A stretch of DNA of 64,000 nt from Pecten maximus (Eukaryota): positions 10,912,001 through 10,976,000 of the forward strand of contig NC_047016.1 in NCBI RefSeq assembly GCF_902652985.1, written 5' to 3'. The notes beneath the pieces are model-generated. The model ran no database searches. It had not been told where the DNA came from and saw nothing but the letters and a program-made list of their open reading frames with translations. Below, in pieces: positions 3,812 through 61,827 of this stretch. Position 1 is the stretch's first letter. Every line of letters begins with the position of its first letter. Made by a program: the position numbers and the translations under genes.

Positions 3812-3978
3812 ATCATGTACATAATTGTTGATCAAATGTGAATAATTTACAAGTTTAGGGGTAATTGATGTGAGAAATTGTATTTGTAATCTACCCTATA
3901 ATTTCTGCATGAAAAACAAATACTCGTGAAATATACATGTATGTTATATTAAACGGAAAACCATTCAATATCCTCTAA

Positions 3979-35836: not shown

Positions 35837-36197
35837 GCCCCGGGATCATGAAGCAGACTTAAGTCTAAGACTAAACTTGGACTTAAGTCTTAAGATTTTA
35901 CTTAGCTAAGACCGCAATCTTAAGTGGATCATGAAACGTGCTAAGCATAATCTTAGCTGAGACTAAACTTAAGTCGAAATCTATAGCAACGCGCGCGCTG
36001 ATTCGCGTATTTGCGGTAATCCATTGGAACTCTTCAGCGCGGGAAACCATCTTCTGTCGTCTGCTGTCAATGTAAACAATGGAATCTGTCAACAGAGGGT
36101 GAAAGTCAAATTGGACCGGGGAGGAGGAGGTTATGCTCGTTGAAGAGGTTTCCAACAGCGAATCTCTGCTGTTTGGAAGGCACGATGGCGCCTCCAG
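35837..36197 (+). repeat. 361-bp Harbinger left-end unit (T allele at 36100, nonsense in Myb exon 1)
   Basis: Runs from the TIR tip to an internal CAG; the next TIR starts at 36198. Confidence 0.95.
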
Positions 36198-37709
36198 GCC
36201 CCGGGATCATGAAGCAGACTTAAGTCTAAGACTAAACTTGGACTTAAGTCTTAAGATTTTACTTAGCTAAGACCGCAATCTTAAGTGGATCATGAAACGT
36301 GCTAAGCATAATCTTAGCTGAGACTAAACTTAAGTCGAAATCTATAGCAACGCGCGCGCTGATTCGCGTATTTGCGGTAATCCATTGGAACTCTTCAGCG
36401 CGGGAAACCATCTTCTGTCGTCTGCTGTCAATGTAAACAATGGAATCTGTCAACAGAGGGAGAAAGTCAAATTGGACCGGGGAGGAGGAGGTTATGCTCG
36501 TTGAAGAGGTTTCCAACAGCGAATCTCTGCTGTTTGGAAGGCACGATGGCGCCTCCAGGACACAGCAGACGAAGAGCAAAGTTTGGCAAGACATTGCCAA
36601 TCGCCTGAATGCGTACGTATACAGTAGAGCTACCAAATTGTTGTGTGCTTGAAGTTTAATTGTTGTGATTCCTTAAAATAATGTTTATGCTGCTATATGT
36701 TAAACTGCATATTAGGTTGGGGACGCGTATCTGTCATGAATTCAGCGTGCCCTCAGTACTCTAGTCTAGAATGAATATCAATACCCTGACAACACTGCTC
36801 TCTGACGAAGATCTTCTGTCAGAAATCGTCCATCCATGTGTACTGTACTGGAAACCCTGTACTGTACACCTTCGAGAGTTTGAGGGATATTCACGTATCT
36901 AAGTAACTTATTTATACACATTTACCCGTCAAATTACTGTTGAAGTGCATGTAAAAAAATATTGACTTTTTAGAAGTTCTGACGTGATTATTTCTTAGAT
37001 TATAGATGTTTATTATATTTGACTTTTATATAGATTCTACATATGTTTGACAAAAAAAAAATCGTTTTTTACTCAAATATTCAATAATTTCAAAATTCAA
37101 TCCTCCTTAATTGTCAATTGATCTGATATTGATGAGCGGACATTTGTCTTCCATTGATGGCTCCAAATTATTTTATACAGGGAAAACACAATTTTACAGT
37201 TACGATAGCTTGTATGCCACACACTTGTCTTTGTAGCAATATTAATGATTGCAACTAGAATTAACTAGGGAGAAACACTGTTCAGGTTTTAGGAAATAAC
37301 CTACATTATCTGTGTACATACAGCTGATATATGGGATTCATAATTAAAAGTATAATGTAAGCGACTAAAAATCAAAAAGTTACATTTACTGCACATGAAG
37401 ATTGGTTTATTGTTTGCGCTGAAGCAATCCGCATAGCACTATTTCACAGTATTTGAACCATAGAAAATGAGAGATGTTGTAAACATTAAAAAAATCCTCT
37501 CATTTGGTTGTAACACTAACAGGTTGTCAATAATGACAAGAAAACCAGTCAGCAAATTGAGCAGTTTATTTATTAATTAATTTATAGATTTATGAATAGG
37601 CCTGCCTTGCAACAAACCTTATAAATACAAATATACAGTATCTAGACTCTTAAACTCAAGGGAAACATCTCTCATTCTTGCCAAATATCATTTTACCACT
37701 TTAACTCTT

Positions 37710-38914
37710 TCTTTTTTTAAATTGTTTTATTTTTCAAAGCTTTTAATACAGATACCATAAGACAGAACATAGAGGGACATACACACTTACCCATACACAT
37801 TCCGATGTACACACACATAACTCGGGACATACATTTGTACATGTATACACACTTACCCAGACACATTCCCATGTACACACACATAACTCGTGACATACAC
37901 ACACACTTACCAACACATATTCCCATGCTTACAGATAAATACTCCCATGCTTTATAATTATCATCACATTCTGCTCACCATTAAACAGTACAAATTAAGA
38001 AGCACCTACATGTACATACATATATATAAAACAAAATAGACAAACAAAATGGAGACAAACAGACAGACAGATGAGAGAAAACTGAGACAGACAGGTAGAG
38101 AGGTTCCCATACACTTTTATTTACTGACAAGTTACTACTTACTAATGTTTAGAAAATATGAATACAAGTTATAATTTCTAATATGGTGTTGTGCCATTAA
38201 AATATAAAGCAATATACTGTATATATATAACACATACAGGTATATATAAAGAAAAACTACATGTTCAAGTGCCATATTAGTCATATTTCTAACAAAGGCA
38301 TCCACTTTCTCCAATTACTTTCAAACTTCTTTTGAATGTTATCACTTTTACTTGAAATGATATACTTTGTACATTATAATGATCTTTAATAACATTAATT
38401 AGTGCATTTATATTAAGAGTTTTATGAAGATATCCTGTTTTATAAATATCATGTTTAATAATTATTAGTATTTTATTATTTATTGTGAAGAAGCTACTCC
38501 AAAAAGTAGAGAATCTTTATTCATTAGAAATGGGATGATAAACAAAATATCAAGCAGAGCTTAAAATCTTTCAAAAAGAGTTTGAACTTCAATACATTCC
38601 CATAAGCAATGTAGTTATTGTTTCCCTTTCCTATTACACAGTGAGCAAATTGGAGTAGGATGTAAATTAATTCTTAAAAGAAATGTATTGGTTACTAAAA
38701 TGTGGTGTAGAATTCTCACTTGAATTTGAAGTTTTGTACTTTTTGTTACAATAAAAGGAATTTTAAAGGTTTTTTCCCCATTTCTTTTTGTCATACTCAA
38801 ATTCCTCATTCCATTTTATTGTACCTGTTGGTGTGATTGCAGGAGTTATCAAGCAGTTATACAAATCTATAGAGCCTTTTTTTTTCTAAAAATTTTTTTT
38901 TCAAATTCAAGGTA
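37710..38914 (-). mobile_element. 5'-truncated degenerate L1/Tx1-like LINE inside Myb intron 1
   Basis: Frameshifted ORF2 C-terminus: KGSIDLY..KW, ILHHILVTN..CSLC..HCLWEC zinc knuckle, KFESNWRKW. AATAAA and A-rich tail near 37710-37735. Candidate TSD tttaactctt at 37700-37709 and 38915-38924. Confidence 0.75.
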
Positions 38915-39772
38915 TTTAACTCTTCTTATACACTTTCACAAATATTACCATTTCAGTAAAACATCTGGCAGCTTTGTAGTTACATTGAAATGAATTTATA
39001 AAATCAAATTGGAAAAAACAACATTACTCGAAAATGATTCAATAATAATAACTTCATACAGCAATAGAATTATTTAAATGCAGAACAAATCAAGCAAATA
39101 AATACAATATAACAAGTTAGTTACAACATTTCCTAAAAACATGTTTAAATTGTTTAAAATAAAAAGTTCACTCTACCACATGATATTTATTCATTATAGA
39201 TATATAGGTACTTTATTTTTTTCTGATTTCACAACAATTCTGTTATTACATATATATATTTGGTCTGAGAACAAACACAAACAGGAATATCAAATCTGAA
39301 TATGTTGAGATTATATTTGTATTTATCCGGCAACTGTCGAAATACACTCACTATATTTATTGTTGCTGTGTACGGCAGTGACAGAAAGCATAAATACTAT
39401 TTAAATAAATAAAAAATTCAAATGCACCAATTTAACACAGAAAATTTATTTCATATTTTTAACATTGAATTTCTGAAAGTTTAGTGTATAGGCATTTTGG
39501 AAGCTTCCCAGTCAATGATTAGACTTGTTTTTAATTCTAATCATCATCAGAAATATATGAATAAAGAAGATTAATATAAAATATCAATCCTATTAAAAGA
39601 AGACATACATGATTTAAATAAAACTGATTGTCACTGGCATAATTGTAAATAAAACATAAACAAATTGAAATCATTTGATTTGTCTGAAGCTTAGAGAAAG
39701 GTTTGAGAAGATATAAGATAGATGATAATATAGCAACAAGATTTTTTAATATGAAGTTTAATGGTATGTATA

Positions 39773-39931
39773 TGTAACCCTGGTAAATACTAGCCGCAAT
39801 ATACCGCTCGGCTAGAGAGATCTTCTCTTTAGCTCGATCGGATGAGCGTAAGACTAGTAAGCCAGAGGTCCCGGGTTCGATCCCTAGCGGAGGCAGTGAT
39901 TTAAATTCAATTAATCATGTGCTCTGTTACA
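39773..39931 (+). mobile_element. 159-bp TGT...ACA element with tRNA-like core (solo LTR of a tRNA-bearing TRIM, or Ginger-like MITE)
   Basis: Ends tgtaac/gttaca, TSD tata, A box tagctcgatcgg, B box ggttcgatcc. Confidence 0.7.
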
Positions 39932-41064
39932 TATATCAAAATACAAATGTGTCTAAAAATACTTTTAAAAGCTGCTAGGTAATTTTTGTTTATTTATTTA
40001 TCTCTTTGAGTATCTAAGTAAAAGCTCATGTAAAGATTTTCTTTCTACTACAAATGTTCTTCTTTTCCAAATTTCAGCAGAAACACATCACTGCAGAGAA
40101 AGGTGCCGGAAATTAAAAAGAAATACCAAAACATCAAGCAGAAAGGTATGATAGTGTTCATTGAACATTATGTTGTTGACATTAGATTTTTATTTATGAG
40201 ATCAACATCATGTTTTAACATAGAACTTAGCATTTTTGAATTCTATAACATGAATGTAGTTATGAAAGCATCATAAACGGTGTATGAAACATAGTTATGT
40301 AAGATACCGGTATTTACATGTTACAAAAATCTTGTTTAATAGCACTGCATCACACTTCCTATTCTCCACAGATAAGATTTATCCTTAAATGCTTAATTGA
40401 CTGTCTATGTTTTAGAATAATCTAAGATGTAGTCAAATTTTTCATTTGAATGTTTCCATCCATCCTTTTGTCTTTATATCAATTGTCCGAGCTCTATGTC
40501 CTACACTGCTTGTCACTGAAACCTCATACCTGGGCCATAAGTTCACCCAAGTCAGGTGGTGTGTCATTTGTGAAATGTAGGTCACTGTGATATACAATGC
40601 ATTTTGACTTTTGACCTATATCTGTATTATCAAACAAATTTCCTGTCTGATCAGCTGCTTATCTTGTCATTGAAACTTCAAACTTGGTATCAATTTCATT
40701 GAACTCCTGATATACACTACCCCAGTAATTAAGATTAGGAAAATCTATGAATTAATTCACATTTTAACCCAGATGTTATATACGACAAATTACTTTGTAT
40801 ATGGCCTAAATGTAAACAGTACTGAGCCCAGTGACAGATGGGCAGGGCTGAAATGGGTCAGTTTGAGTAAACTACATCAGGCTCCGGGATCATGAAACAG
40901 ACTTAAGTCTAAGTTTTGACTTAAGCTTAAGATTTTTGACTTAAGTCTGAAAACAGACTTAAATCGAGGTTCATGAAATAAAACTTAAGTCTTAAGTCTA
41001 TTTTTCAGTCTTAAATCCTAAGACTGCTACAGGGCAGACTTAAGTCCGTTTTTTTGTCTTAAAT

Positions 41065-44000
41065 ATGGCGGACATAGTAAGATTAGTTGATCGTCTGCGA
41101 CAACGAGAAGAAAGGAGAGCAGTTCGTCCGAGGACCTTTAGAGATCGGCTTAATCCTTTGGAGATGAGGACAGATGAGGAGTTGTACGCCAGGTACAGGT
41201 TCAGGAGACCCACCTTGCTATTTATTGTTCATTTGGTCGCCGATAGTATAACGCATCCAACGAGAAGATCCCAAAGTCTGCCTCCTCTCATACAGGTTCT
41301 CGTTTTTTTGAGATTTCTGGCGACAGGGGCATTTCACCAACTGATTGGCGACGCCATTCACATATCAAAGGCCACTGCTGGACGCTGCATCCGTCGTGTT
41401 GCGGACGTCCTCGTTAGATTGCGTGGGGATTTCATCAAATTCCCGACTGGGCAGGCGGCAGACAACACAAAACGTGCCTTTCACGCTATTGCAGGTGCGT
41501 ATTTCCAATTAAAAGACATAAATGATATCGAATCTAGTACCACAGACAAGTTTTGAGCGTTCCACTTGATGTAAACAATGTGACTGCAGCGCCCCCATCG
41601 ATAATTACGTCATATAGTACTATGTACCGTATCTAAACAAATAAACGCCCTCATTGTTATATATGTGTGTTATCAATCGTATGAGAAGGGTTTCCCTCTG
41701 TTATAAAAACATCGTTAACAACAAAAAATTGTCTAATCAGCTCTTTGCTGAAAGTCAACAATTGTGAAGCTTTGATCAATTAAAATTGCAGGTAGAAACA
41801 GTTCTAGATCAAATTATATGTTTGTTCTTATTTTTTTTTTTATTTCAAGATATTCATATGAAATGAAATATTGTTTTAATACTTATTAAGTGTACTATTT
41901 CAATTTCACAATTGTAATACTTCCATTTCATAGTGTACTTTGTCATTGTACAGTACATGTGCTTGTACATATCACTATGAATTTAAAAATAGTTAAAAAA
42001 CAAAACAAAAAAGAAAAATTATTTGTTTAATATAGCTTTTATTTGGGAAACAACTTAGGATTCATAACAGTAATTAAAATATATATATATTGCACATGCA
42101 TATGTACAGCTTCCTGTTTCAAGCAATTGATTGTCCTTGAAATAACATAAAAAGAAAATTTTGATCAAATGTCGTGATTCGAACCGAGCAAAATATCATT
42201 TGGGGCTTTCTGAAACTAGTTATATATGAATAAAAATTCAAGAACAAATGTGAAAATCTGCACAACTTAGGACCATGTGTAATGTGCATATTGAAATGAA
42301 ATAATTCTATCTAACTGCTTCAATTTAAGAGGAGGCCCATGGGCCTCAACAGTCACCTGAGTTTAGAAATATTAAAGTTAATTTAATTTACCCTGCTGGC
42401 CCCGCCCATCAGCTCAGGGCCAACGTGTGCATACCATCGAGCTGTCATCCCATGCTGATAATGTTAACAAAGTTATTATGAATTTCAATAAAATCAAACA
42501 ACTGATAGTCAAAAATTTGATTTCCCTATATAAACTATTGTAAAGTTTACCCCCTCCTCAGGGGCAAACGTGAGACCCCAGGAGCATGAAATTTACAATT
42601 TTGGTAAAGTACCTGAAGACTTTTCCATGCATATGAAGTGTACTATTTTTAGGCCAACACCACCATATGTGCAAATATTTACATAAGGAAGCGTTTTCTA
42701 AACTGCTGGCCAAAGACTGCAGTAATAAGTTCCACTAAAGAAACAAATTCATAATTCTAAAACTTCATTAAAATCTGGTTTTATTTTCATATTGTAGAAC
42801 TATTCTCTCAATATTAAACTACATGCATTTTGATATTGGAATAACACTATTTTCTTCAATCTTCACATTTAGAAGTAAAAAGTTTTAAACAGTTGTCGAA
42901 ATTGCAGGCCTCAGACCGCAAGTAATTACCATCTACGTTCTTTTTAAAAAAATTTTTATAGACAATCCATAAATTTACTCGACATGGGCCACTCATGATG
43001 ATCACAAAGACACTGAGACTGACTTTGAACTACAGGGAAAGTCTCAAAACATCATTTTAATAAAATGGCTATGTCAAACAAACAAACAAACAAACAATTT
43101 TCCTTCTCTCATTTGTATCATTATGTTTTTATTGGGTTTTTCGAAGAAGTTTTTTTTTTAAATTTCAGTTAATTTCAATTTCAACACATTTTATTGTCAT
43201 TTAATTCGACAAATGGATCTGACATCAGGCATAGCCTATTTAAGTCATCTCCATATAAACATATATACAGGTAACAATTTTTTAATCTCGAATATAACAG
43301 AAGTAGTATACATAATTTTATATATATTAACAGGAACATATATATGAATATCTCTTGGATATGACTTGTTAGCAGGACCCACTCGATGAGATCGGCTGAT
43401 GTTGGCCTCTGTAATCATGATACCAAGTTCATTTAAAATCATTTGACCCTTTTTGACATTGCCCATAAGCCAAAGGAGTCAGGCAGTTTATAAACTAAAA
43501 ATCTTGAATTGTGTATTTTTAAGGCATGCCACAGGTATTGGGATGCATTGATGGGACATTTGTCAGAATATCTACACCAAGAGAAAATGAACCTGACTAT
43601 GTCAATAGAAAAGGATTCCATTCTCTGAATGATCAGGTATAATGTGTAAAAATAGAAACTTTAATATTGATCAAGATTTCATGCAGAATGGATACCTTAA
43701 TTGCTACATGTATTTAAGAAAAGAATAGTTTTATCTGTGACAAGTACTGCATTCATGTTAGCTCACTGAAATGTATACATTGTATTTACCTGGTATTAAA
43801 TCTCAAATACATGCATACCACATTCCCCAATGTGAAGTCTATAATTCTTTCATTATTTAATATGAAAAAAAAACCACCTTTGAAATATGCATACTTATTT
43901 CACTTTCACAGATGGTCTGCAACAACAACTTCATCATAACCAACTGTGTGGCCCGTTGGCCTGGTTCATGTCATGACTCAAGAGTGTTCCGAGAAAGTCA

Positions 44001-44705
44001 GCTTTGTCATGACTTTGAAAATGGTAATAAACATTCATGTAAAACTATGTACTGTACCCTATAAAATTGATGTTACATCAATATATCAAGTTCATCAAAC
44101 AATATATATCATTTTCATTTGTTACAAATCATTTGTGGTATATCCAAATATTTATGAAGATTTAACAGTACATAATTATAATTTTGAATAAGAAGATATA
44201 TTACTTTTGAGAATTAAATTGAAAGTAATGTCACTTTACACAATGATATATCTATGAATGATGAATAAACAATGAAAAGAGAAACTTGAAGAAGCTATAA
44301 TCCTTAATTATAACAGACCTATACAGTGGATTCCTGCTAGGGGACTCAGGCTACCCTTGCCGCAGGTATTTGATGACACCATACAATCACACCAATGATA
44401 TTAGACACCGGGAGCGATTCAATGGAGCATTGTGTAGAACAAGAGTGGTCATCGAGCAGACGTTTGGAATTTTGAAGAGGCGCTTCAGCTGCCTATCAAT
44501 TGGTCTGAGAACAAACCCAAACAGAGCATGCAAATATATTGTGGCATGTGCCATATTGCACAACATAGGTATCTTAAGACAAGATATAGTATCAGAAACA
44601 GTTGATGACCTAGTAGTACAAGGCCCAGATGTTCTGGAACATAATCATTTAAATGAAAATGGATTTGGGATAAGAGAGAACATGGCAAGAAACCTTTTTT
44701 CTTAG
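41065..44705 (+). CDS. Harbinger DDE transposase (HARBI1-like), inverted copy, 347 aa; exons 41065-41494, 43524-43636, 43912-44023, 44317-44705
   Basis: 430+113+112+389=1044 nt open, GT-AG introns. Motifs [22 protein letters not shown](D)[38 protein letters not shown]. Confidence 0.92.
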
Positions 44706-45083
44706 TAATTTTCTATAGCTAGGTACTCTCTGGAGTGGGGCAGTGCAAGCATATATATATATATTTATGGGCCAGTGGGGTTAGAGTCACCATTCAAAAT
44801 CTGTTCCCCTTTTTCCAAAGATTTTTGTGACCAAATAAGATAAAAATCTATTCAGAACTTATAAGAGCAGTAATTTATAGGGCTTAGATTACCTCTATTT
44901 TCCCAATCAGACCCCGCCCATTCCGCACTTTGGGAGTCACCCCTTATGCAAAATCTGCTCCCTTCACCCAATGATGTTTCTGACCAAATTTGGTTAAAAT
45001 CCACAAAGTATTTTATGACTAGTAGCGGTTAAAAGAAAATGTTGACAGAACAAATTGTAGTGGAAAAGTTTCAGAAACATTAT

Positions 45084-46022
45084 TTATTCTTCAAAGGAAG
45101 GCTCAATTGCCTTAATTTGAAGAATAGCAAGATGTTTCTGAATCTTGACCAGTTCAATCCTCTCCAGAATCAGATTCCTTGCGTCTTTCACTCGGGCAAG
45201 TTCCTCCAACAATACTTCATCAGACAAATCTTTTTTCTGTTTTGATGATGTACATGTAGATGTGGCTGTATGTGGGGCTGTTAATCCATCTGTGTGTGTG
45301 GCTTGTGATGCTGCTGGGGAGATATAAGTTATTGGCATATCCATATCAACTCCTGAATAAGTTGGTAGGATGTTGATAAACCCAGGTGAAAGAGGCACTG
45401 AAAAAAAAGAATACATATGCATATGCATGTATACAATAAGATAAAGACAGCATTATCAACTCAATACCGTATTTTATCGGGTATAAGCCCATGATCAAGG
45501 ATAAACCCCCTCCCCCCTATTTTTCACTTTTTTTCTGCAAAGGCTCGGTAAGACATTTTATATGACATGGCAAAAAGACATCACAAAGAGATTTTGACAC
45601 CAACAATTGAATGATCTTTATTGGACCTTTTCCTTTTAATGTAAATCATTTGTTTTCTTATCGTCAAGTTTCAATATTGAGACATAAGAGAAACTGTATA
45701 AGTTTTTACTATATAACTCAAAATTGGCACAAGGAACTTGTCCGAAAGACCCACTTGAGTAATAGTAACAAGTACATTGACAGGTCAGAAAGGCCCATCA
45801 TGTGATGATATACATCATTGAAAAAAATTATTTAATGAATTGTATTTTGAGATATTTAATACCCTTTAACCATACCAGCAGTGTCAATTCCTTCAGAGAG
45901 TCCACAGAGACTTGGTCTTCCCTCCAGGTTCTGTAATACCAGCCTTTCTGGCACTGTTGGTGAAGCTGGTTTCTTGCCACCACCAGTCTTTGGGTGCAGT
46001 AATCCTGATCTTTTTTCTTTTG
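45084..46022 (-). pseudogene. Orphaned Myb/SANT exons 3-4 (45876-46022, 45084-45397)
   Basis: Reverse complement of 51644-52582, separated from the promoter and exons 1-2. Confidence 0.85.
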
Positions 46023-46131
46023 CTACAATATACAAATGTATTATATTACATCTCAGTTTGTATCAATCAAAATGTGCCTTGTGTTTCATTTTCACAAGGG
46101 GCCTAATGGCCTTATAGGTCAATGTGTTCTG

Positions 46132-46853
46132 GCCCCGGGATCATGAAGCAGACTTAAGTCTAAGACTAAACTTGGACTTAAGTCTTAAGATTTTACTTAG
46201 CTAAGACCGCAATCTTAAGTGGATCATGAAACGTGCTAAGCATAATCTTAGCTGAGACTAAACTTAAGTCGAAATCTATAGCAACGCGCGCGCTGATTCG
46301 CGTATTTGCGGTAATCCATTGGAACTCTTCAGCGCGGGAAACCATCTTCTGTCGTCTGCTGTCAATGTAAACAATGGAATCTGTCAACAGAGGGAGAAAG
46401 TCAAATTGGACCGGGGAGGAGGAGGTTATGCTCGTTGAAGAGGTTTCCAACAGCGAATCTCTGCTGTTTGGAAGGCACGATGGCGCCTCCAGGCCCCGGG
46501 ATCATGAAGCAGACTTAAGTCTAAGACTAAACTTGGACTTAAGTCTTAAGATTTTACTTAGCTAAGACCGCAATCTTAAGTGGATCATGAAACGTGCTAA
46601 GCATAATCTTAGCTGAGACTAAACTTAAGTCGAAATCTATAGCAACGCGCGCGCTGATTCGCGTATTTGCGGTAATCCATTGGAACTCTTCAGCGCGGGA
46701 AACCATCTTCTGTCGTCTGCTGTCAATGTAAACAATGGAATCTGTCAACAGAGGGTGAAAGTCAAATTGGACCGGGGAGGAGGAGGTTATGCTCGTTGAA
46801 GAGGTTTCCAACAGCGAATCTCTGCTGTTTGGAAGGCACGATGGCGCCTCCAG
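46132..46853 (+). repeat. Two tandem 361-bp left-end units (46132-46492 A allele; 46493-46853 T allele)
   Basis: Each begins at the TIR tip and ends at the same internal CAG. Confidence 0.95.
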
Positions 46854-47095
46854 GCCCCGGGATCATGAAGCAGACTTAAGTCTAAGACTAAACTTGGACT
46901 TAAGTCTTAAGATTTTACTTAGCTAAGACCGCAATCTTAAGTGGATCATGAAACGTGCTAAGCATAATCTTAGCTGAGACTAAACTTAAGTCGAAATCTA
47001 TAGCAACGCGCGCGCTGATTCGCGTATTTGCGGTAATCCATTGGAACTCTTCAGCGCGGGAAACCATCTTCTGTCGTCTGCTGTCAATGTAAACA

Positions 47096-50000
47096 ATGGA
47101 ATCTGTCAACAGAGGGAGAAAGTCAAATTGGACCGGGGAGGAGGAGGTTATGCTCGTTGAAGAGGTTTCCAACAGCGAATCTCTGCTGTTTGGAAGGCAC
47201 GATGGCGCCTCCAGGACACAGCAGACGAAGAGCAAAGTTTGGCAAGACATTGCCAATCGCCTGAATGCGTACGTATACAGTAGAGCTACCAAATTGTTGT
47301 GTGCTTGAAGTTTAATTGTTGTGATTCCTTAAAATAATGTTTATGCTGCTATATGTTAAACTGCATATTAGGTTGGGGACGCGTATCTGTCATGAATTCA
47401 GCGTGCCCTCAGTACTCTAGTCTAGAATGAATATCAATACCCTGACAACACTGCTCTCTGACGAAGATCTTCTGTCAGAAATCGTCCATCCATGTGTACT
47501 GTACTGGAAACCCTGTACTGTACACCTTCGAGAGTTTGAGGGATATTCACGTATCTAAGTAACTTATTTATACACATTTACCCGTCAAATTACTGTTGAA
47601 GTGCATGTAAAAAAATATTGACTTTTTAGAAGTTCTGACGTGATTATTTCTTAGATTATAGATGTTTATTATATTTGACTTTTATATAGATTCTACATAT
47701 GTTTGACAAAAAAAAATCGTTTTTTACTCAAATATTCAATAATTTCAAAATTCAATCCTCCTTAATTGTCAATTGATCTGATATTGATGAGCGGACATTT
47801 GTCTTCCATTGATGGCTCCAAATTATTTTATACAGGGAAAACACAATTTTACAGTTACGATAGCTTGTATGCCACACACATGTCTTTGTAGCAATATTAA
47901 TGATTGCAACTAGAATTAACTAGGGAGAAACACTGTTCAGGTTTTAGGAAATAACCTACATTATCTGTGTACATACAGCTGATATATGGGATTCATAATT
48001 AAAAGTATAATGTAAGCGACTAAAAATCAAAAAGTTACATTTACTGCACATGAAGATTGGTTTATTGTTTGCGCTGAAGCAATCCGCATAGCACTATTTC
48101 ACAGTATTTGAACCATAGAAAATGAGAGATGTTGTAAACATTAAAAAAATCCTCTCATTTGGTTGTAACACTAACAGGTTGTCAATAATGACAAGAAAAC
48201 CAGTCAGCAAATTGAGCAGTTTATTTATTAATTAATTTATAGATTTATGAATAGGCCTGCCTTGCAACAAACCTTATAAATACAAATATACAGTATCTAG
48301 ACTCTTAAACTCAAGGGAAACATCTCTCATTCTTGCCAAATATCATTTTACCACTTTAACTCTTTCTTTTTTTAAATTGTTTTATTTTTCAAAGCTTTTA
48401 ATACAGATACCATAAGACAGAACATAGAGGGACATACACACTTACCCATACACATTCCGATGTACACACACATAACTCGGGACATACATTTGTACATGTA
48501 TACACACTTACCCAGACACATTCCCATGTACACACACATAACTCGTGACATACACACACACTTACCAACACATATTCCCATGCTTACAGATAAATACTCC
48601 CATGCTTTATAATTATCATCACATTCTGCTCACCATTAAACAGTACAAATTAAGAAGCACCTACATGTACATACATATATATAAAACAAAATAGACAAAC
48701 AAAATGGAGACAAACAGACAGACAGATGAGAGAAAACTGAGACAGACAGGTAGAGAGGTTCCCATACACTTTTATTTACTGACAAGTTACTACTTACTAA
48801 TGTTTAGAAAATATGAATACAAGTTATAATTTCTAATATGGTGTTGTGCCATTAAAATATAAAGCAATATACTGTATATATATAACACATACAGGTATAT
48901 ATAAAGAAAAACTACATGTTCAAGTGCCATATTAGTCATATTTCTAACAAAGGCATCCACTTTCTCCAATTACTTTCAAACTTCTTTTGAATGTTATCAC
49001 TTTTACTTGAAATGATATACTTTTGTACATTATAATGATCTTTAATAACATTAATTAGTGCATTTATATTAAGAGTTTTATGAAGATATCCTGTTTTATA
49101 AATATCATGTTTAATAATTATTAGTATTTTATTATTTATTGTGAAGAAGCTACTCCAAAAAGTAGAGAATCTTTATTCATTAGAAATGGGATGATAAACA
49201 AAATATCAAGCAGAGCTTAAAATCTTTCAAAAAGAGTTTGAACTTCAATACATTCCCATAAGCAATGTAGTTATTGTTTCCCTTTCCTATTACACAGTGA
49301 GCAAATTGGAGTAGGATGTAAATTAATTCTTAAAAGAAATGTATTGGTTACTAAAATGTGGTGTAGAATTCTCACTTGAATTTGAAGTTTTGTACTTTTT
49401 GTTACAATAAAAGGAATTTTAAAGGTTTTTTCCCCATTTCTTTTTGTCATACTCAAATTCCTCATTCCATTTTATTGTACCTGTTGGTGTGATTGCAGGA
49501 GTTATCAAGCAGTTATACAAATCTATAGAGCCTTTTTTTTTCTAAAATTTTTTTTTTCAAATTCAAGGTATTTAACTCTTCTTATACACTTTCACAAATA
49601 TTACCATTTCAGTAAAACATCTGGCAGCTTTGTAGTTACATTGAAATGAATTTATAAAATCAAATTGGAAAAAACAACATTACTCGAAAATGATTCAATA
49701 ATAATAACTTCATACAGCAATAGAATTATTTAAATGCAGAACAAATCAAGCAAATAAATACAATATAACAAGTTAGTTACAACATTTCCTAAAAACATGT
49801 TTAAATTGTTTAAAATAAAAAAGTTCACTCTACCACATGATATTTATTCATTATAGATATATAGGTACTTTATTTTTTTCTGATTTCACAACAATTCTGT
49901 TATTACATATATATATTTGGTCTGAGAACAAACACAAACAGGAATATCAAATCTGAATATGTTGAGATTATATTTGTATTTATCCGGCAACTGTCGAAAT

Positions 50001-52582
50001 ACACTCACTATATTTATTGTTGCTGTGTACGGCAGTGACAGAAAGCATAAATACTATTTAAATAAATAAAAAATTCAAATGCACCAATTTAACACAGAAA
50101 ATTTATTTCATATTTTTAACATTGAATTTCTGAAAGTTTAGTGTATAGGCATTTTGGAAGCTTCCCAGTCAATGATTAGACTTGTTTTTAATTCTAATCA
50201 TCATCAGAAATATATGAATAAAGAAGATTAATATAAAATATCAATCCTATTAAAAGAAGACATACATGATTTAAATAAAACTGATTGTCACTGGCATAAT
50301 TGTAAATAAAACATAAACAAATTGAAATCATTTGATTTGTCTGAAGCTTAGAGAAAGGTTTGAGAAGATATAAGATAGATGATAATATAGCAACAAGATT
50401 TTTTAATATGAAGTTTAATGGTATGTATATGTAACCCTGGTAAATACTAGCCGCAATATACCGCTCGGCTAGAGAGATCTTCTCTTTAGCTCGATCGGAT
50501 GAGCGTAAGACTAGTAAGCCAGAGGTCCCGGGTTCGATCCCTAGCGGAGGCAGTGATTTAAATTCAATTAATCATGTGCTCTGTTACATATATCAAAATA
50601 CAAATGTGTCTAAAAATACTTTTAAAAGCTGCTAGGTAATTTTTGTTTATTTATTTATCTCTTTGAGTATCTAAGTAAAAGCTCATGTAAAGATTTTCTT
50701 TCTACTACAAATGTTCTTCTTTTCCAAATTTCAGCAGAAACACATCACTGCAGAGAAAGGTGCCGGAAATTAAAAAGAAATACCAAAACATCAAGCAGAA
50801 AGGTATGATAGTGTTCATTGAACATTATGTTGTTGACATTAGATTTTTATTTATGAGATCAACATCATGTTTTAACATAGAACTTAGCATTTTTGAATTC
50901 TATAACATGAATGTAGTTATGAAAGCATCATAAACGGTGTATGAAACATAGTTATGTAAGATACCGGTATTTACATGTTACAAAAATCTTGTTTAATAGC
51001 ACTGCATCACACTTCCTATTCTCCACAGATAAGATTTATCCTTAAATGCTTAATTGACTGTCTATGTTTTAGAATAATCTAAGATGTAGTCAAATTTTTC
51101 ATTTGAATGTTTCCATCCATCCTTTTGTCTTTATATCAATTGTCCGAGCTCTATGTCCTACACTGCTTGTCACTGAAACCTCATACCTGGGCCATAAGTT
51201 CACCCAAGTCAGGTGGTGTGTCATTTGTGAAATGTAGGTCACTGTGATATACAATGCATTTTGACTTTTGACCTATATCTGTATTATCAAACAAATTTCC
51301 TGTCTGATCAGCTGCTTATCTTGTCATTGAAACTTCAAACTTGGTATCAATTTCATTGAACTCCTGATATACACTACCCCAGTAATTAAGATTAGGAAAA
51401 TCTATGAATTAATTCACATTTTAACCCAGATGTTATATACGACAAATTACTTTGTATATGGCCTAAATGTAAACAGTACTGAGCCCAGTGACAGATGGGC
51501 AGGGCTGAAATGGGTCAGTTTGAGTAAACTACATCAGAACACATTGACCTATAAGGCCATTAGGCCCCTTGTGAAAATGAAACACAAGGCACATTTTGAT
51601 TGATACAAACTGAGATGTAATATAATACATTTGTATATTGTAGCAAAAGAAAAAAGATCAGGATTACTGCACCCAAAGACTGGTGGTGGCAAGAAACCAG
51701 CTTCACCAACAGTGCCAGAAAGGCTGGTATTACAGAACCTGGAGGGAAGACCAAGTCTCTGTGGACTCTCTGAAGGAATTGACACTGCTGGTATGGTTAA
51801 AGGGTATTAAATATCTCAAAATACAATTCATTAAATAATTTTTTTCAATGATGTATATCATCACATGATGGGCCTTTCTGACCTGTCAATGTACTTGTTA
51901 CTATTACTCAAGTGGGTCTTTCGGACAAGTTCCTTGTGCCAATTTTGAGTTATATAGTAAAAACTTATACAGTTTCTCTTATGTCTCAATATTGAAACTT
52001 GACGATAAGAAAACAAATGATTTACATTAAAAGGAAAAGGTCCAATAAAGATCATTCAATTGTTGGTGTCAAAATCTCTTTGTGATGTCTTTTTGCCATG
52101 TCATATAAAATGTCTTACCGAGCCTTTGCAGAAAAAAAGTGAAAAATAGGGGGGAGGGGGTTTATCCTTGATCATGGGCTTATACCCGATAAAATACGGT
52201 ATTGAGTTGATAATGCTGTCTTTATCTTATTGTATACATGCATATGCATATGTATTCTTTTTTTTCAGTGCCTCTTTCACCTGGGTTTATCAACATCCTA
52301 CCAACTTATTCAGGAGTTGATATGGATATGCCAATAACTTATATCTCCCCAGCAGCATCACAAGCCACACACACAGATGGATTAACAGCCCCACATACAG
52401 CCACATCTACATGTACATCATCAAAACAGAAAAAAGATTTGTCTGATGAAGTATTGTTGGAGGAACTTGCCCGAGTGAAAGACGCAAGGAATCTGATTCT
52501 GGAGAGGATTGAACTGGTCAAGATTCAGAAACATCTTGCTATTCTTCAAATTAAGGCAATTGAGCCTTCCTTTGAAGAATAA
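47096..52582 (+). CDS. Harbinger Myb/SANT-like DNA-binding protein, 233 aa; exons 47096-47268, 50735-50802, 51644-51790, 52269-52582
   Basis: 173+68+147+314=702 nt open, GT-AG introns (NAGNAG at exon 2). Motifs RKSNWT.EE..LVE, K.KVW..IA..LN, R..EIKKKYQN, KTGGG, GIDT and a C-terminal coiled coil. Confidence 0.9.
48365..49571 (-). mobile_element. Second copy of the L1/Tx1-like LINE fragment
   Basis: Duplicate of 37710-38914 at an offset of about 10,656. Confidence 0.75.
50430..50588 (+). mobile_element. Second copy of the 159-bp tRNA-bearing TGT...ACA element
   Basis: Duplicate of 39773-39931 with tata TSD. Confidence 0.7.
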
Positions 52583-52960
52583 ATAATGTTTCTGAAACTT
52601 TTCCACTACAATTTGTTCTGTCAACATTTTCTTTTAACCGCTACTAGTCATAAAATACTTTGTGGATTTTAACCAAATTTGGTCAGAAACATCATTGGGT
52701 GAAGGGAGCAGATTTTGGATAAGGGGTGACTCCCAAAGTGCGGAATGGGCGGGGTCTGATTGGGAAAATAGAGGTAATCTAAGCCCTATAAATTACTGCT
52801 CTTATAAGTTCTGAATAGATTTTTATCTTATTTGGTCACAAAAATCTTTGGAAAAAGGGGAACAGATTTTGAATGGTGACTCTAACCCCACTGGCCCATA
52901 AATGTATATATATATGCTTGCACTGCCCCACTCCAGAGAGTACCTAGCTATAGAAAATTA

Positions 52961-55900
52961 CTAAGAAAAAAGGTTTCTTGCCATGTTCTCTCTTATCCCA
53001 AATCCATTTTCATTTAAATGATTATGTTCCAGAACATCTGGGCCTTGTACTACTAGGTCATCAACTGTTTCTGATACTATATCTTGTCTTAAGATACCTA
53101 TGTTGTGCAATATGGCACATGCCACAATATATTTGCATGCTCTGTTTGGGTTTGTTCTCAGACCAATTGATAGGCAGCTGAAGCGCCTCTTCAAAATTCC
53201 AAACGTCTGCTCGATGACCACTCTTGTTCTACACAATGCTCCATTGAATCGCTCCCGGTGTCTAATATCATTGGTGTGATTGTATGGTGTCATCAAATAC
53301 CTGCGGCAAGGGTAGCCTGAGTCCCCTAGCAGGAATCCACTGTATAGGTCTGTTATAATTAAGGATTATAGCTTCTTCAAGTTTCTCTTTTCATTGTTTA
53401 TTCATCATTCATAGATATATCATTGTGTAAAGTGACATTACTTTCAATTTAATTCTCAAAAGTAATATATCTTCTTATTCAAAATTATAATTATGTACTG
53501 TTAAATCTTCATAAATATTTGGATATACCACAAATGATTTGTAACAAATGAAAATGATATATATTGTTTGATGAACTTGATATATTGATGTAACATCAAT
53601 TTTATAGGGTACAGTACATAGTTTTACATGAATGTTTATTACCATTTTCAAAGTCATGACAAAGCTGACTTTCTCGGAACACTCTTGAGTCATGACATGA
53701 ACCAGGCCAACGGGCCACACAGTTGGTTATGATGAAGTTGTTGTTGCAGACCATCTGTGAAAGTGAAATAAGTATGCATATTTCAAAGGTGGTTTTTTTT
53801 TCATATTAAATAATGAAAGAATTATAGACTTCACATTGGGGAATGTGGTATGCATGTATTTGAGATTTAATACCAGGTAAATACAATGTATACATTTCAG
53901 TGAGCTAACATGAATGCAGTACTTGTCACAGATAAAACTATTCTTTTCTTAAATACATGTAGCAATTAAGGTATCCATTCTGCATGAAATCTTGATCAAT
54001 ATTAAAGTTTCTATTTTTACACATTATACCTGAACATTCAGAGAATGGAATCCTTTTCTATTGACATAGTCAGGTTCATTTTCTCTTGGTGTAGATATTC
54101 TGACAAATGTCCCATCAATGCATCCCAATACCTGTGGCATGCCTTAAAAATACACAATTCAAGATTTTTAGTTTATAAACTGCCTGACTCCTTTGGCTTA
54201 TGGGCAATGTCAAAAAGGGTCAAATGATTTTAAATGAACTTGGTATCATGATTACAGAGGCCAACATCAGCCGATCTCATCGAGTGGGTCCTGCTAACAA
54301 GTCATATCCAAGAGATATTCATATATATGTTCCTGTTAATATATATAAAATTATGTATACTACTTCTGTTATATTCGAGATTAAAAAATTGTTACCTGTA
54401 TATATGTTTATATGGAGATGACTTAAATAGGCTATGCCTGATGTCAGATCCATTTGTCGAATTAAATGACAATAAAATGTGTTGAAATTGAAATTAACTG
54501 AAATTTAAAAAAAAAACTTCTTCGAAAAACCCAATAAAAACATAATGATACAAATGAGAGAAGGAAAATTGTTTGTTTGTTTGTTTGTTTGACATAGCCA
54601 TTTTATTAAAATGATGTTTTGAGACTTTCCCTGTAGTTCAAAGTCAGTCTCAGTGTCTTTGTGATCATCATGAGTGGCCCATGTCGAGTAAATTTATGGA
54701 TTGTCTATAAAAAAATTTTTAAAAAGAACGTAGATGGTAATTACTTGCGGTCTGAGGCCTGCAATTTCGACAACTGTTTAAAACTTTTTACTTCTAAATG
54801 TGAAGATTGAAGAAAATAGTGTTATTCCAATATCAAAATGCATGTAGTTTAATATTGAGAGAATAGTTCTACAATATGAAAATAAAACCAGATTTTAATG
54901 AAGTTTTAGAATTATGAATTTGTTTCTTTAGTGGAACTTATTACTGCAGTCTTTGGCCAGCAGTTTAGAAAACGCTTCCTTATGTAAATATTTGCACATA
55001 TGGTGGTGTTGGCCTAAAAATAGTACACTTCATATGCATGGAAAAGTCTTCAGGTACTTTACCAAAATTGTAAATTTCATGCTCCTGGGGTCTCACGTTT
55101 GCCCCTGAGGAGGGGGTAAACTTTACAATAGTTTATATAGGGAAATCAAATTTTTGACTATCAGTTGTTTGATTTTATTGAAATTCATAATAACTTTGTT
55201 AACATTATCAGCATGGGATGACAGCTCGATGGTATGCACACGTTGGCCCTGAGCTGATGGGCGGGGCCAGCAGGGTAAATTAAATTAACTTTAATATTTC
55301 TAAACTCAGGTGACTGTTGAGGCCCATGGGCCTCCTCTTAAATTGAAGCAGTTAGATAGAATTATTTCATTTCAATATGCACATTACACATGGTCCTAAG
55401 TTGTGCAGATTTTCACATTTGTTCTTGAATTTTTATTCATATATAACTAGTTTCAGAAAGCCCCAAATGATATTTTGCTCGGTTCGAATCACCACATTTG
55501 ATCAAAATTTTCTTTTTATGTTATTTCAAGGACAATCAATTGCTTGAAACAGGAAGCTGTACATATGCATGTGCAATATATATATATTTTAATTACTGTT
55601 ATGAATCCTAAGTTGTTTCCCAAATAAAAGCTATATTAAACAAATAATTTTTCTTTTTTGTTTTGTTTTTTAACTATTTTTAAATTCATAGTGATATGTA
55701 CAAGCACATGTACTGTACAATGACAAAGTACACTATGAAATGGAAGTATTTCAATTGTGAAATTGAAATAGTACACTTAATAAGTATTAAAACAATATTT
55801 CATTTCATATGAATATCTTGAAATAAAAAAAAAATAAGAACAAACATATAATTTGATCTAGAACTGTTTCTACCTGCAATTTTAATTGATCAAAGCTTCA

Positions 55901-56600
55901 CAATTGTTGACTTTCAGCAAAGAGCTGATTAGACAATTTTTTGTTGTTAACGATGTTTTTATAACAGAGGGAAACCCTTCTCATACGATTGATAACACAC
56001 ATATATAACAATGAGGGCGTTTATTTGTTTAGATACGGTACATAGTACTATATGACGTAATTATCGATGGGGGCGCTGCAGTCACATTGTTTACATCAAG
56101 TGGAACGCTCAAAACTTGTCTGTGGTACTAGATTCGATATCATTTATGTCTTTTAATTGGAAATACGCACCTGCAATAGCGTGAAAGGCACGTTTTGTGT
56201 TGTCTGCCGCCTGCCCAGTCGGGAATTTGATGAAATCCCCACGCAATCTAACGAGGACGTCCGCAACACGACGGATGCAGCGTCCAGCAGTGGCCTTTGA
56301 TATGTGAATGGCGTCGCCAATCAGTTGGTGAAATGCCCCTGTCGCCAGAAATCTCAAAAAAACGAGAACCTGTATGAGAGGAGGCAGACTTTGGGATCTT
56401 CTCGTTGGATGCGTTATACTATCGGCGACCAAATGAACAATAAATAGCAAGGTGGGTCTCCTGAACCTGTACCTGGCGTACAACTCCTCATCTGTCCTCA
56501 TCTCCAAAGGATTAAGCCGATCTCTAAAGGTCCTCGGACGAACTGCTCTCCTTTCTTCTCGTTGTCGCAGACGATCAACTAATCTTACTATGTCCGCCAT
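52961..56600 (-). CDS. Harbinger DDE transposase (HARBI1-like), 347 aa; exons 56600-56171, 54142-54030, 53754-53643, 53349-52961
   Basis: Open spliced frame with catalytic D (IDGT), D (GDSGY), E (VIEQTFG) and the canonical HSLNVQ. Confidence 0.93.
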
Positions 56601-57429
56601 ATTTAAGACAAAAAAACGGACTTAAGTCTGCCCTGTAGCAGTCTTAGGATTTAAGACTGAAAAATAGACTTAAGACTTAAGTTTTATTTCATGAACCTCG
56701 ATTTAAGTCTGTTTTCAGACTTAAGTCAAAAATCTTAAGCTTAAGTCAAAACTTAGACTTAAGTCTGTTTCATGATCCCGGAGCCAGGTGTTTCGGAAAG
56801 GCCAACGTCTTTTGGTTCTTTGACGGCATCTATCATGTCAATCTGGGTCAAATACGAGTCGAATTCTCAAAATGAGAACAAAGGCGGTCACAATGGACCA
56901 CTAGACACATAAACAACAAGCAACGAACACTGATTTCATATCGTATAATGAAATGTCATATTTTCAAATGAGATCACGATATCGACAATCTGTATCTCGA
57001 TATATTGCGCTGTTGATTTTTAAGTCAATCATCGACATCTGTCACGGAAATTTTGATAATTAGAAAAATATTTAAATATATAAAATCGACTGGGACATGT
57101 TAACACCGCGTGTATTGAAAGCAGGTATGTTTCTAGCAAGAAATGGAAAATTAACAATGGGGATATTTAAATCGTCACGCTTATCACACAGCTTGGTTGT
57201 TATCTGTTCCTGCCGGTAACGTTGTAAGTAAAGATAGAGGTAAACGTTTGGTGTTAAAATGTCTTTAGTGTCATTAATTGCAAAGTCTTAATGCCCAATC
57301 GACATTGTTAATAAAGATTTTGTTATTTTAAGATAACACATCGTCAATATATGTACATGCATCTATGAGTGAAATTGAACGACTCTGATAAGCTTGTTTA
57401 TATAATCTGTCTGATATGAAACAAAAACA

Positions 57430-58482: not shown

Positions 58483-58620
58483 CATTAGTCTGTTGGAAGA
58501 TCTGGTCACCAAACTCAATAAAAATGGTGTCGATCAAATATTAAATAATTCCCACTTTCTATGGGAGTTATCTCCTCCCATAAAATACTGATTGAAATGG
58601 TATTCCATCTTCATAATTTC

Positions 58621-61734: not shown

Positions 61735-61827
61735 CACAGGTGCCTGACTCGTTTTATAAAATAATAACATATAGATTTATATGTACTCTATATGTTATTA
61801 TTTTATAAAACGAGTCAGGCACCTGTG
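61735..61827. mobile_element. 93-bp fold-back MITE (CACAGG ends, 7-bp TSD; P-superfamily-like)
   Basis: Perfect 41-bp arms cacaggtgcctgactcgttttataaaataataacatataga with an 11-nt spacer; TSD gttcgac at 61728-61734 and 61828-61834. Confidence 0.88.

What the first reader, a model, noticed from the sequence alone, without database searches (positions are those of the whole stretch)
35837..56784. Harbinger that repeatedly transposed into itself: hybrid-element/sister-chromatid transposition record
Seen order: CAG-[u][L]-CAG-[R inverted]-CTG-[u][u][L][R]-CAG. All internal junctions (36197/8, 40880/1, 46131/2, 46492/3, 46853/4) are exactly TIR tip plus CWG. The intron CAG (51535-51537 in the intact copy) is duplicated in inverted form on either side of the inversion, and the outer TSD is preserved. 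Established: P-element hybrid element insertion and Ac/Ds alternative transposition pair ends from sister chromatids. Inference: the right end of one chromatid and the left end of the other inserted inside the element. One orientation gives L-R(inv)-L-R, the other gives u-L-R, so one mechanism explains all junction types. I do not recall this being documented for animal Harbingers.
Basis: partly seen in the sequence, partly recalled or inferred. Interest (0 to 1): 0.85.

Follow-up and report, generated by a model that had tools for sequence, protein, structure and literature searches.

The report
Scallop Harbinger transposon inserted into itself
A young 9.9-kb Harbinger transposon in the king scallop genome has been cut and pasted into a copy of itself at least twice, leaving a 21-kb scrambled double element; the junctions are real transposase joints, but the sequence alone cannot show that the two ends came from sister chromatids.

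Summary
Window 35837-56784 reads CAG|u|u+L|CAG-inverted R-CTG|u|u|intact element|CAG. Every internal joint is an exact TIR tip next to CWG.

The element is a two-gene PIF/Harbinger of Pecten maximus. It carries a 4-exon Myb/SANT gene on + and a DDE_Tnp_4 transposase on -. Four other copies in the genome are 99.4-99.9% identical, have a single u and are flanked by CWG duplications. Tip-to-internal joints occur only at this locus.

The hybrid-end (HEI / sister-chromatid) model does generate the structure. A second route gives the same 21,948-bp sequence letter for letter: ordinary insertion of a whole copy into the copy on the sister or homologue, followed by homologous recombination between the resulting long repeats. 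The HEI reading is therefore sufficient but not unique.

Only two transposase events are needed, at element positions 359-361 and 4682-4684. The uneven u counts (2 and 3) are most simply a change in tandem-repeat copy number.

The assembly (PacBio CLR, wtdbg2) may show the wrong flip isomer.

This is a new member of a known kind, of moderate interest. Two other notes of this scan cover this same stretch; none cover other DNA.

The parts
35834..35836 (.). Outer left target-site duplication, CAG
   Evidence: Read directly; matches the CAG at 56785-56787.
35837..36197 (+). Extra unit u: element positions 1-361 (left TIR, subterminal repeats, Myb promoter/5'UTR and the first 39.7 codons of Myb exon 1). 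Ends in CAG.
   Evidence: Identical to the other four u copies.
36198..40880 (+). Left part of the split copy: element positions 1-4684, with Myb exon 1 (ATG at 36440) and exon 2. Ends in the target CAG at 40878-40880.
   Evidence: 99.9% to 46854-51537.
40881..46131 (-). Right part of the split copy, inverted: element positions 9931 down to 4682. Starts with the right TIR tip GCTCCGGG and ends in CTG (the inverted duplicate of the target). The transposase gene now reads on the + strand (ATG 41065, stop about 44705) and carries a private V->D change (SLNVQ>SLNDQ) in the DDE exon 43523-43639.
46132..46492 (+). Extra unit u. Its left tip is joined to the CTG at 46129-46131.
46493..46853 (+). Extra unit u
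46854..56784 (+). Intact canonical element, 9,931 bp. The TIRs match at 31 of the first 33 positions.
   Evidence: Colinear with four other genomic copies at 99.4-99.9%; TIR alignment.
47096..52582 (+). Myb/SANT-like gene of the intact copy, 4 exons at about 47096-47268, 50735-50802, 51644-51790 and 52269-52582. It encodes the 233-aa protein P0001 (= XP_033728066.1, 'uncharacterized protein', Pecten maximus).
   Evidence: exact peptide mapping; Myb_DNA-bind_5, E=1.9e-17.
52961..56600 (-). Transposase gene of the intact copy, multi-exon. First coding exon lies in 56109-56600. DDE_Tnp_4 exons are at 54027-54143 (profile 1-34) and 52964-53365 (profile 77-158), with a probable middle exon in 53478-53726.
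   Evidence: The full splice model was not built.
47212..47214 (+). Target site 1: CAG at element 359-361, inside Myb exon 1 (codons S39/R40). Used for the u|tip joints.
51535..51537 (+). Target site 2: CAG at element 4682-4684, in Myb intron 2, about 107 nt upstream of the exon 3 acceptor. Used for the inversion joints.
56785..56787 (.). Outer right target-site duplication, CAG

Best explanation
A recently active 9.9-kb PIF/Harbinger element of Pecten maximus was integrated by its own transposase into a copy of itself at the same locus, at two different CWG sites.

Most likely route (inferred): hybrid-end transposition. The right end of the copy on one chromatid and the left end of the copy on the sister (or homologous) chromatid were synapsed, cut and inserted as a pair.

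Event 1 went into CAG 359-361 in the non-inverting orientation. It joined [1-361] to a complete copy, giving u+E, and the rest was lost as a circle.

Event 2 went into CAG 4682-4684 (Myb intron 2) in the inverting orientation. It gave [u][uL]CAG-inverted R-CTG-[u][uLR].

A third step added or removed one 361-bp unit, giving 2 units on the left and 3 on the right. This was either unequal exchange within the tandem array or another event of type 1.

Shown: the exact tip joints, the 3-bp duplications (inverted around the inverted segment), two copies' worth of DNA, and unchanged outer flanks.

Inferred: that the two ends came from different chromatids.

Predicted consequence, not tested: the locus now holds 5 left and 2 right ends and a 5.25-kb inverted duplication of the whole transposase gene with a 5.4-kb spacer. 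It should therefore be unstable and could make hairpin RNA against the family.
For: Structure and joints. Harbinger identity: Myb_DNA-bind_5 and DDE_Tnp_4, a 3-bp CWG duplication at 4 other copies, and CWG at 27 of 29 tips. The u tandem and the internal tip joints exist only at this locus, so the rearrangement arose here. A breadth-first search over hybrid-end events reaches the observed order in 3 events, and both product types come from one mechanism. The predicted sequence is colinear with window 35337-57284 at 99.93% over 21,948 bp. Pairing of ends from separate molecules is documented for P, Ac/Ds, Tam3, piggyBac and Sleeping Beauty (PMC3744419, PMC2775673, PMC3952818). Transposase-dependent aberrant events are documented for the plant PIF/Harbinger pair Ping/mPing (PMC7584900). 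This route needs 3 steps, against 5 for the nested-insertion route.
Against: The final sequence is identical under ordinary nested insertion plus homologous recombination, so nothing in the sequence shows that the ends came from different chromatids. The assembly is wtdbg2 on PacBio CLR (PMC7191990) and could have threaded the 5.25-kb inverted arms in the wrong isomer. No simpler allele or reciprocal product is present in the assembly. Hybrid-end synapsis has never been shown for a Harbinger transposase.
Confidence: 0.5

Rival explanations
1. Ordinary self-insertion followed by homologous recombination. A complete copy, excised normally with both of its own ends from the sister or homologue, inserted into the resident copy. 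The first insertion was direct, at CAG 359-361, and recombination between the 9.6-kb direct repeats left u+E. The second was inverted, at CAG 4682-4684, giving a 'double-Ds-like' nest L-CAG|inv R-inv L|CAG-R. Recombination between the inverted R arms then flipped the middle segment into the observed order.
For: The sequence-level simulation gives exactly the same 21,948-bp product as the hybrid-end route. The two joints of the un-flipped nest are letter-for-letter those at 40880/1 and 46131/2. Each step is an ordinary, well-known process. Inverted repeats of 5 kb flip readily. The 0.09% divergence between the halves leaves time for recombination. The same ambiguity between HEI and ectopic recombination is discussed for Galileo in PMC2775673.
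Against: It needs about 5 steps instead of 3. It needs two independent hits of a 10-kb target by a family with about 5 copies in 918 Mb, which is plausible only with strong local or sister targeting. No un-recombined intermediate is found anywhere in the assembly.
Confidence: 0.32
2. The assembly shows a wrong arrangement. The joints exist in the animal, but the order, the orientation of the segment between the 5.25-kb inverted arms, or the number of u units was mis-threaded by the assembler. The true allele could be the plain nested isomer, or the two haplotypes could differ.
For: The assembler was wtdbg2 on PacBio CLR reads of about 10 kb mean length, polished with short reads (PMC7191990). 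The region is full of tandem arrays. The halves differ by an odd set of substitutions, 6 of 7 being A<->T or C<->G (p=7e-4 against the other copies), which hints at consensus errors. No read check was possible.
Against: An assembler cannot invent tip+CWG joints, so the three joint types must be present in reads. Many CLR reads exceed the 5.25-kb arm plus anchors. The assembly was manually curated (PMC7191990).
Confidence: 0.1
3. Reversed-ends transposition on one chromatid. A second copy first inserted in tandem right next to the first, into its flanking CAG. The facing right end of copy 1 and left end of copy 2 then transposed together into copy 1.
For: The topology and product are the same as for hybrid-end insertion (PMC2775673 defines the two as differing only in where the two copies sit). 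The flanking duplication is itself a CWG target.
Against: It needs an extra, exactly adjacent insertion for which there is no trace. It is otherwise indistinguishable from the hybrid-end route.
Confidence: 0.05
4. Replication template switching (FoSTeS/MMBIR-type DUP-INV-DUP) or random breakage and joining, without transposase.
For: Inverted duplications with a spacer are typical products of template switching.
Against: All three joint types fall exactly on TIR tips and next to CWG. Microhomology at the joints is only 1 nt. The target triplet is duplicated on both sides of the inverted segment, as expected from a 3-bp staggered cut. By chance this would be about (2/64)^2 for the two sites, times the chance of hitting two tips exactly.
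Confidence: 0.02

Closest known systems
P-element hybrid element insertion (HEI; Gray, Tanaka & Sved 1996; Preston, Sved & Engels 1996, as cited in PMC3744419 and PMC2775673)
   Same: A left end and a right end from copies at the same site on sister or homologous chromatids insert together nearby. This gives duplications or deletions in one orientation and inversions in the other. The new joints are flanked by target-site duplications, and the outer flanks stay unchanged.
   Different: A different superfamily (P, 8-bp duplication). HEI was shown genetically, with marked flanks, in Drosophila. Here there is only a fossil product, and the target lies inside the element itself. The original papers were not held in the library, so details of HEI into the P element itself rest on my memory.
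Ac/Ds alternative transposition (sister-chromatid and reversed-ends transposition) and the 'Ac killer' composite insertions
   Same: Ends of two copies act as one transposon. The products include tandem direct duplications and inverted duplications of transposon sequence (PMC3744419; bioRxiv 10.1101/2020.01.07.897926). The inverted Ac duplications are transcribed into dsRNA and silence Ac.
   Different: hAT superfamily, in a plant. The composite insertions there involve re-replication and Mb-scale flanking duplications. Here only element DNA is duplicated, and no RNA data exist.
Double Ds (one Ds inserted in inverted orientation into an identical Ds)
   Same: A nested self-insertion of a cut-and-paste element. 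It has the same two joint sequences as the un-flipped isomer predicted by the rival model. Such structures trigger aberrant transposition involving sister chromatids (English et al. 1995, cited in PMC3952818).
   Different: The order assembled here is the flipped isomer, not the plain nest. It also carries tandem left-end units.
Ping/mPing aberrant transposition in rice (PIF/Harbinger)
   Same: The same superfamily. Rearrangement breakpoints lie at element termini, which implicates the transposase acting on ends of different copies (PMC7584900).
   Different: A plant MITE. The ends belong to linked elements at different sites, giving a megatransposon and deletions. That work used short reads only, so no inversions and no self-insertion were seen.
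Autointegration of excised Sleeping Beauty / piggyBac (PMC3952818)
   Same: The transposase inserts element ends into the element's own DNA, giving deletion circles or inversions.
   Different: Autointegration of one excised molecule cannot leave two copies' worth of DNA in the chromosome. A second copy is required here.

Membership tests
PIF/Harbinger superfamily | DDE transposase of the DDE_Tnp_4 / Plant_tran type | tested here: met
   PF13359 matches exon frames 54027-54143 (profile 1-34) and 52964-53365 (profile 77-158, E=3.9e-17).
PIF/Harbinger superfamily | Second gene encoding a Myb/SANT-like DNA-binding protein | tested here: met
   The 4-exon gene encodes P0001 (233 aa), Myb_DNA-bind_5 at E=1.9e-17.
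PIF/Harbinger superfamily | 3-bp target-site duplication (TWA or CWG) and short TIRs | tested here: met
   CAG/CAG or CTG/CTG at all 5 full copies. CWG at 27 of 29 tips. TIRs match at 31 of the first 33 nt. That CWG is a known Harbinger target type is from my memory of Kapitonov & Jurka 2004.
Hybrid-end (HEI / sister-chromatid) transposition product | New joints lie exactly at one left tip and one right tip, each abutting the same target site, duplicated | tested here: met
   40880/1 reads CAG|right tip. 46131/2 reads CTG|left tip, the inverted duplicate of CAG 4682-4684. The u joints read CAG 359-361|left tip.
Hybrid-end (HEI / sister-chromatid) transposition product | More than one copy's worth of element DNA, with unchanged outer flanks | tested here: met
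   L+R is present twice. The outer CAG duplications are intact.
Hybrid-end (HEI / sister-chromatid) transposition product | The two ends came from different chromatids, meaning the structure is not an ordinary insertion followed by recombination | tested here: inconclusive
   Both routes give the identical sequence. There are no informative parental differences: only two homopolymer-type sites, 47707 and 54714-5.
Hybrid-end (HEI / sister-chromatid) transposition product | The structure is present in the organism (reads span the joints) | not testable with these tools
Hairpin 'killer' locus (Mu killer / Ac killer type) | Inverted duplication of transposon coding sequence | tested here: met
   The arms 40881-46131 and 51535-56784 are 99.85% complementary with a 5,403-nt spacer and contain the whole transposase gene.
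Hairpin 'killer' locus (Mu killer / Ac killer type) | Transcription through both arms, small RNAs, and silencing in trans | not testable with these tools
   No RNA or small-RNA data could be reached.

The most novel reading that the evidence does not exclude
The locus is a natural record of bimolecular (sister-chromatid) end pairing by an animal Harbinger transposase. Its by-product, a 5.25-kb inverted duplication of the whole transposase gene placed downstream of a Myb-gene promoter, acts as a self-made hairpin 'killer' that feeds small RNAs against the family. [quoted passage not shown]
Probability: 0.12. Interest if true: 0.75.

Novelty: new member of a known kind. Interest (0 to 1): 0.5.

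Why it matters
Aberrant or self-directed transposition is known to restructure genomes and to start transposon silencing. It has been demonstrated mainly for P in flies and for Ac/Ds and Mutator in maize. For PIF/Harbinger the library searches turned up only rice mPing, studied with short reads.

This locus is a clean, base-exact natural example in an animal, from a family that still looks active: five copies over 99.4% identical, with the Myb-like gene and the transposase DDE exons checked reading open. It offers a concrete place to test three things: whether Harbinger transposases pair ends from two DNA molecules; how unstable such multi-ended composites are in a highly heterozygous broadcast spawner; and whether inverted transposase duplications seed piRNA/siRNA defence in molluscs.

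It is also a caution. HEI-type products and nested insertion plus recombination cannot be told apart from a single assembled haplotype.

Tried and rejected

3. Simpler alleles or haplotigs. Both flanks (35000-35836 and 56785-57400) are unique in the assembly. They match only dispersed repeats elsewhere.

4. Other tip+CWG internal joints in the genome. All 29 tips of this TIR type were inspected, and there are none outside this locus.

5. C18:32623742 looked like a second left-end duplication. It is a slippage between two GGATCATGA motifs, not a tip joint.

6. The solo ends on C4 have non-tip inner breakpoints, so they are not evidence for the mechanism.

7. Simple nested insertion without recombination is rejected. 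The right tip of the intact copy abuts the host flank, not element DNA.

8. Autointegration of one excised element is rejected, because it cannot duplicate DNA.

9. Template switching is rejected, because of the exact tips, the CWG and the duplicated target.

10. Using sequence variants to tell chimeric from non-chimeric arms failed. Only two homopolymer-type shared sites exist, which is uninformative.

11. The original HEI papers (PMC1207712, PMC1207714) are not held.

12. The transposase splice model and the Myb-transposase fusion proposed in another note were not built.
Full report
WHAT IS THERE

The repeat finder and a self-BLAST of window 34000-58500 show the following.
- A direct repeat: 35833-40880 = 46489-51537 (5,050 nt, 99.90%).
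- An inverted repeat: 40880-46131 = reverse complement of 51535-56785 (5,252 nt, 99.85%).
- Five identical 361-bp units (u), starting at 35837, 36198, 46132, 46493 and 46854.

I read the joints directly.
- Each u ends ...GGCGCCTCCAG and is followed by the left tip GCCCCGGGATCATGAAG.
- At 40880/1, ...AAACTACATCAG is followed by the right tip GCTCCGGGATCATGAAA.
- At 46131/2, ...CAATGTGTTCTG is followed by the left tip.
- The whole block is flanked by CAG on both sides.

The order is therefore CAG | u | u+L (element 1-4684) | inverted R (element 9931-4682) | u | u | intact element (46854-56784, 9,931 bp) | CAG.

WHAT THE ELEMENT IS

Pfam finds a Myb_DNA-bind_5 domain on the + strand near the left end, and DDE_Tnp_4 in exon-sized frames on the - strand of the right half.

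A search of the protein representatives with the open frame 52238-52579 returned a 233-aa public protein, P0001. Its sequence maps without a mismatch onto four exons of the intact copy, at about 47096-47268, 50735-50802, 51644-51790 and 52269-52582. P0001 is annotated as an uncharacterized protein of Pecten maximus at four loci, with a near-identical protein at a fifth.

The window's genome has 918,306,378 bp in 3,983 pieces. This is the exact size of the king scallop assembly described in PMC7191990. That assembly was made from PacBio CLR reads at about 66x, assembled with wtdbg2, polished with Arrow and then with 10X/freebayes, scaffolded with Hi-C, and manually curated.

The CAG that ends u (47212-47214) lies in exon 1.

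THE FAMILY IN THE GENOME

Four other full-length copies, on C13, C14, C16 and C4, are 99.4-99.9% identical to the intact copy. Each has a single u, and each is flanked by CAG/CAG or CTG/CTG.

A pattern search for the tip found 29 tips in the genome, and 27 are preceded by CWG. Tips whose outer flank is element DNA occur only at this locus. The tips and the 3-bp CWG duplication are therefore well defined, the family is young, and the rearrangement arose here.

MECHANISM: WHAT IS SHOWN

All internal joints are tip + CWG. The two joints around the inverted segment carry the same triplet in opposite orientation, which is what a 3-bp staggered cut followed by inversion of one side produces. The block holds two copies' worth of element DNA, and the outer duplication is untouched.

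These facts rule out several explanations.
- Template switching or random breakage: microhomology at the joints is only 1 nt, and the tips are exact.
- Autointegration of a single excised element, which cannot duplicate DNA.
- A simple nested insertion, because the right tip of the intact copy abuts host DNA.

I put transposase-mediated insertion of element ends into a second copy of the element at the same locus at about 0.9.

MECHANISM: WHAT IS INFERRED

I simulated hybrid-end events symbolically: right tip of chromatid 1 plus left tip of chromatid 2, targets at the two CWG sites, both orientations. From one canonical element, the eight one-step products include u-L-R (non-inverting, a circle is lost) and L-R(inv)-L-R (inverting). 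The observed order is reached in three steps: E > uE > u[uL]-invR-u[uLR] > one more u.

There is, however, a second route, which I tested at sequence level.
- An ordinary inverted insertion of a whole copy into CAG 4682-4684 gives L-CAG|invR-invL|CAG-R. Its two joints are letter for letter the sequences at 40880/1 and 46131/2. One crossover between the inverted R arms flips the middle segment and gives the observed order.
- An ordinary direct insertion into CAG 359-361, followed by recombination between the 9.6-kb direct repeats, gives u+E.

The sequences built by the two routes are identical (21,948 bp). Both align end to end with window 35337-57284 at 99.93% (11 mismatches, 4 gaps).

This is the same ambiguity as the one discussed for Galileo inversions (PMC2775673). 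There it was resolved only because the parental copies differed. Here the parental copies were near-identical. The only shared variable sites, 47707 and 54714-5, are homopolymer-type and compatible with both routes.

I favour the hybrid-end route at 0.5, against 0.32 for the nested-insertion route. It needs three steps rather than about five, and it needs no un-recombined intermediates, of which none is seen.

A reversed-ends event from a head-to-tail dimer on one chromatid gives the same product (0.05).

HOW MANY EVENTS

Only two target sites are used. The element has 275 CWG sites, so repeated independent hits on 359-361 are unlikely. The unequal u counts, 2 on the left and 3 on the right, are most simply one gain or loss in a tandem array after the first u duplication had been copied into both halves. 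'Repeatedly' therefore means at least twice.

RELIABILITY OF THE ASSEMBLY

The assembly holds no alternative haplotig of the flanks.

An assembler cannot invent tip+CWG joints, so I take the joints as real. The flip state of the segment between the 5.25-kb arms, and the number of u units, do depend on correct threading by wtdbg2. The region is also rich in minisatellites. I give 0.1 to a wrong arrangement.

One oddity remains. Of the 7 private non-homopolymer substitutions that distinguish the two halves, 6 are A<->T or C<->G, against 5 of about 33 in the other copies (p=7e-4). I have no explanation; polishing error is a guess.

CONSEQUENCES (INFERENCE)

The block has five left tips and two right tips, one of them reversed, so it offers many non-canonical end pairs. 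The whole transposase gene is present as a 5.25-kb inverted duplication with a 5.4-kb spacer. The inverted copy sits on the same strand as, and downstream of, the truncated Myb gene, and carries a private V>D change in a DDE exon.

In maize, inverted Ac duplications made by alternative transposition are transcribed into dsRNA and silence Ac (bioRxiv 10.1101/2020.01.07.897926). Whether anything similar happens here is untested.

COMPARISON WITH WHAT IS KNOWN

Pairing of ends from two molecules is established for P (HEI), Ac/Ds (sister-chromatid and reversed-ends transposition), Tam3, piggyBac and Sleeping Beauty (PMC3744419, PMC2775673, PMC3952818). Nested self-insertion is classical for double Ds. 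For PIF/Harbinger, aberrant transposition between linked mPing elements is reported in rice, from short reads that could not detect inversions (PMC7584900).

My library searches found no report of hybrid-end or self-insertion products for an animal Harbinger. The library is incomplete, so this is absence of evidence only.

I therefore class the finding as a new member of a known kind.

OTHER NOTES OF THIS SCAN

Two other first-stage notes cover this same stretch: s1-792411 (intact two-gene Harbinger) and s1-791992 (a proposed Myb-transposase fusion in the split copy).
- The first agrees with what I found.
- The coordinates of the second fit the Myb ATG at 36440 and the transposase stop near 44705. 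I did not test the splice or the reading frame, and I did not build or search any joined model.

VERDICT

Interest 0.5.

Noticed in passing
window 36440-44705: In the split copy, the truncated Myb gene (exons 1-2, + strand) is followed by the inverted right end, so the complete transposase gene lies downstream on the same strand. Another note of this scan (s1-791992) proposes an in-frame Myb-transposase fusion. The coordinates fit the gene positions, but the splice and the frame were not tested.
   Followed up: partly
window 43632 (mirror of 54034): The inverted transposase copy has a private A>T change that gives V>D in the conserved SLNVQ stretch of the DDE exon. All five other copies have V.
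   Followed up: yes
window 37225, 44948, 43632, 42173, 41915 and their partners 47880, 52718, 54034, 55493, 55751: Six of the 7 private substitutions between the two halves are A<->T or C<->G transversions. This spectrum is not seen in the other genomic copies (Fisher p=7e-4). Unexplained.
   Followed up: partly
G000 C4:25673930-25674300 (L058) and C4:30345663-30345769 (L059): Two solo ends of the same family, about 99% identical: a 371-bp right end and a 107-bp left end. Both are flanked by CWG at the tip, have non-tip inner breakpoints, sit in the same orientation and lie 4.7 Mb apart, on the same chromosome as the full copy at C4:32.02 Mb. Their origin is unknown.
   Followed up: partly
G000 C5:3944141-3944212 (L073), C19:8946827-8946895 (L078), C18:19268793 (L077): Mini-elements of about 70 bp made of two abutting TIRs of this family (84-100% to the tips). 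They may be extreme deletion derivatives.
   Followed up: no
G000 C18:32623742-32623940 (L071): The left end of a related copy carries a 77-bp internal tandem duplication between two GGATCATGA motifs (element positions 7-15 and 90-98). The same motif pair exists in the window's element and may be a protein-binding site.
   Followed up: partly
G000 C16:28332964-28344621: The C16 copy carries an insertion of about 1.7 kb at element position 3548. The C4 copy has internal deletions of 167, 147 and 8 bp. The C13 and C14 copies are full length.
   Followed up: no
window 3979-31587 and 57433-64000: The composite sits in a region dense with minisatellite arrays: units of 18, 22, 27, 28, 33, 38, 44, 47-49 bp and others. 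One is a 24-copy 44-bp array that starts 650 bp from the right end. A repeat of about 50 bp in the left flank (35703-35776) has hundreds of copies genome-wide.
   Followed up: no
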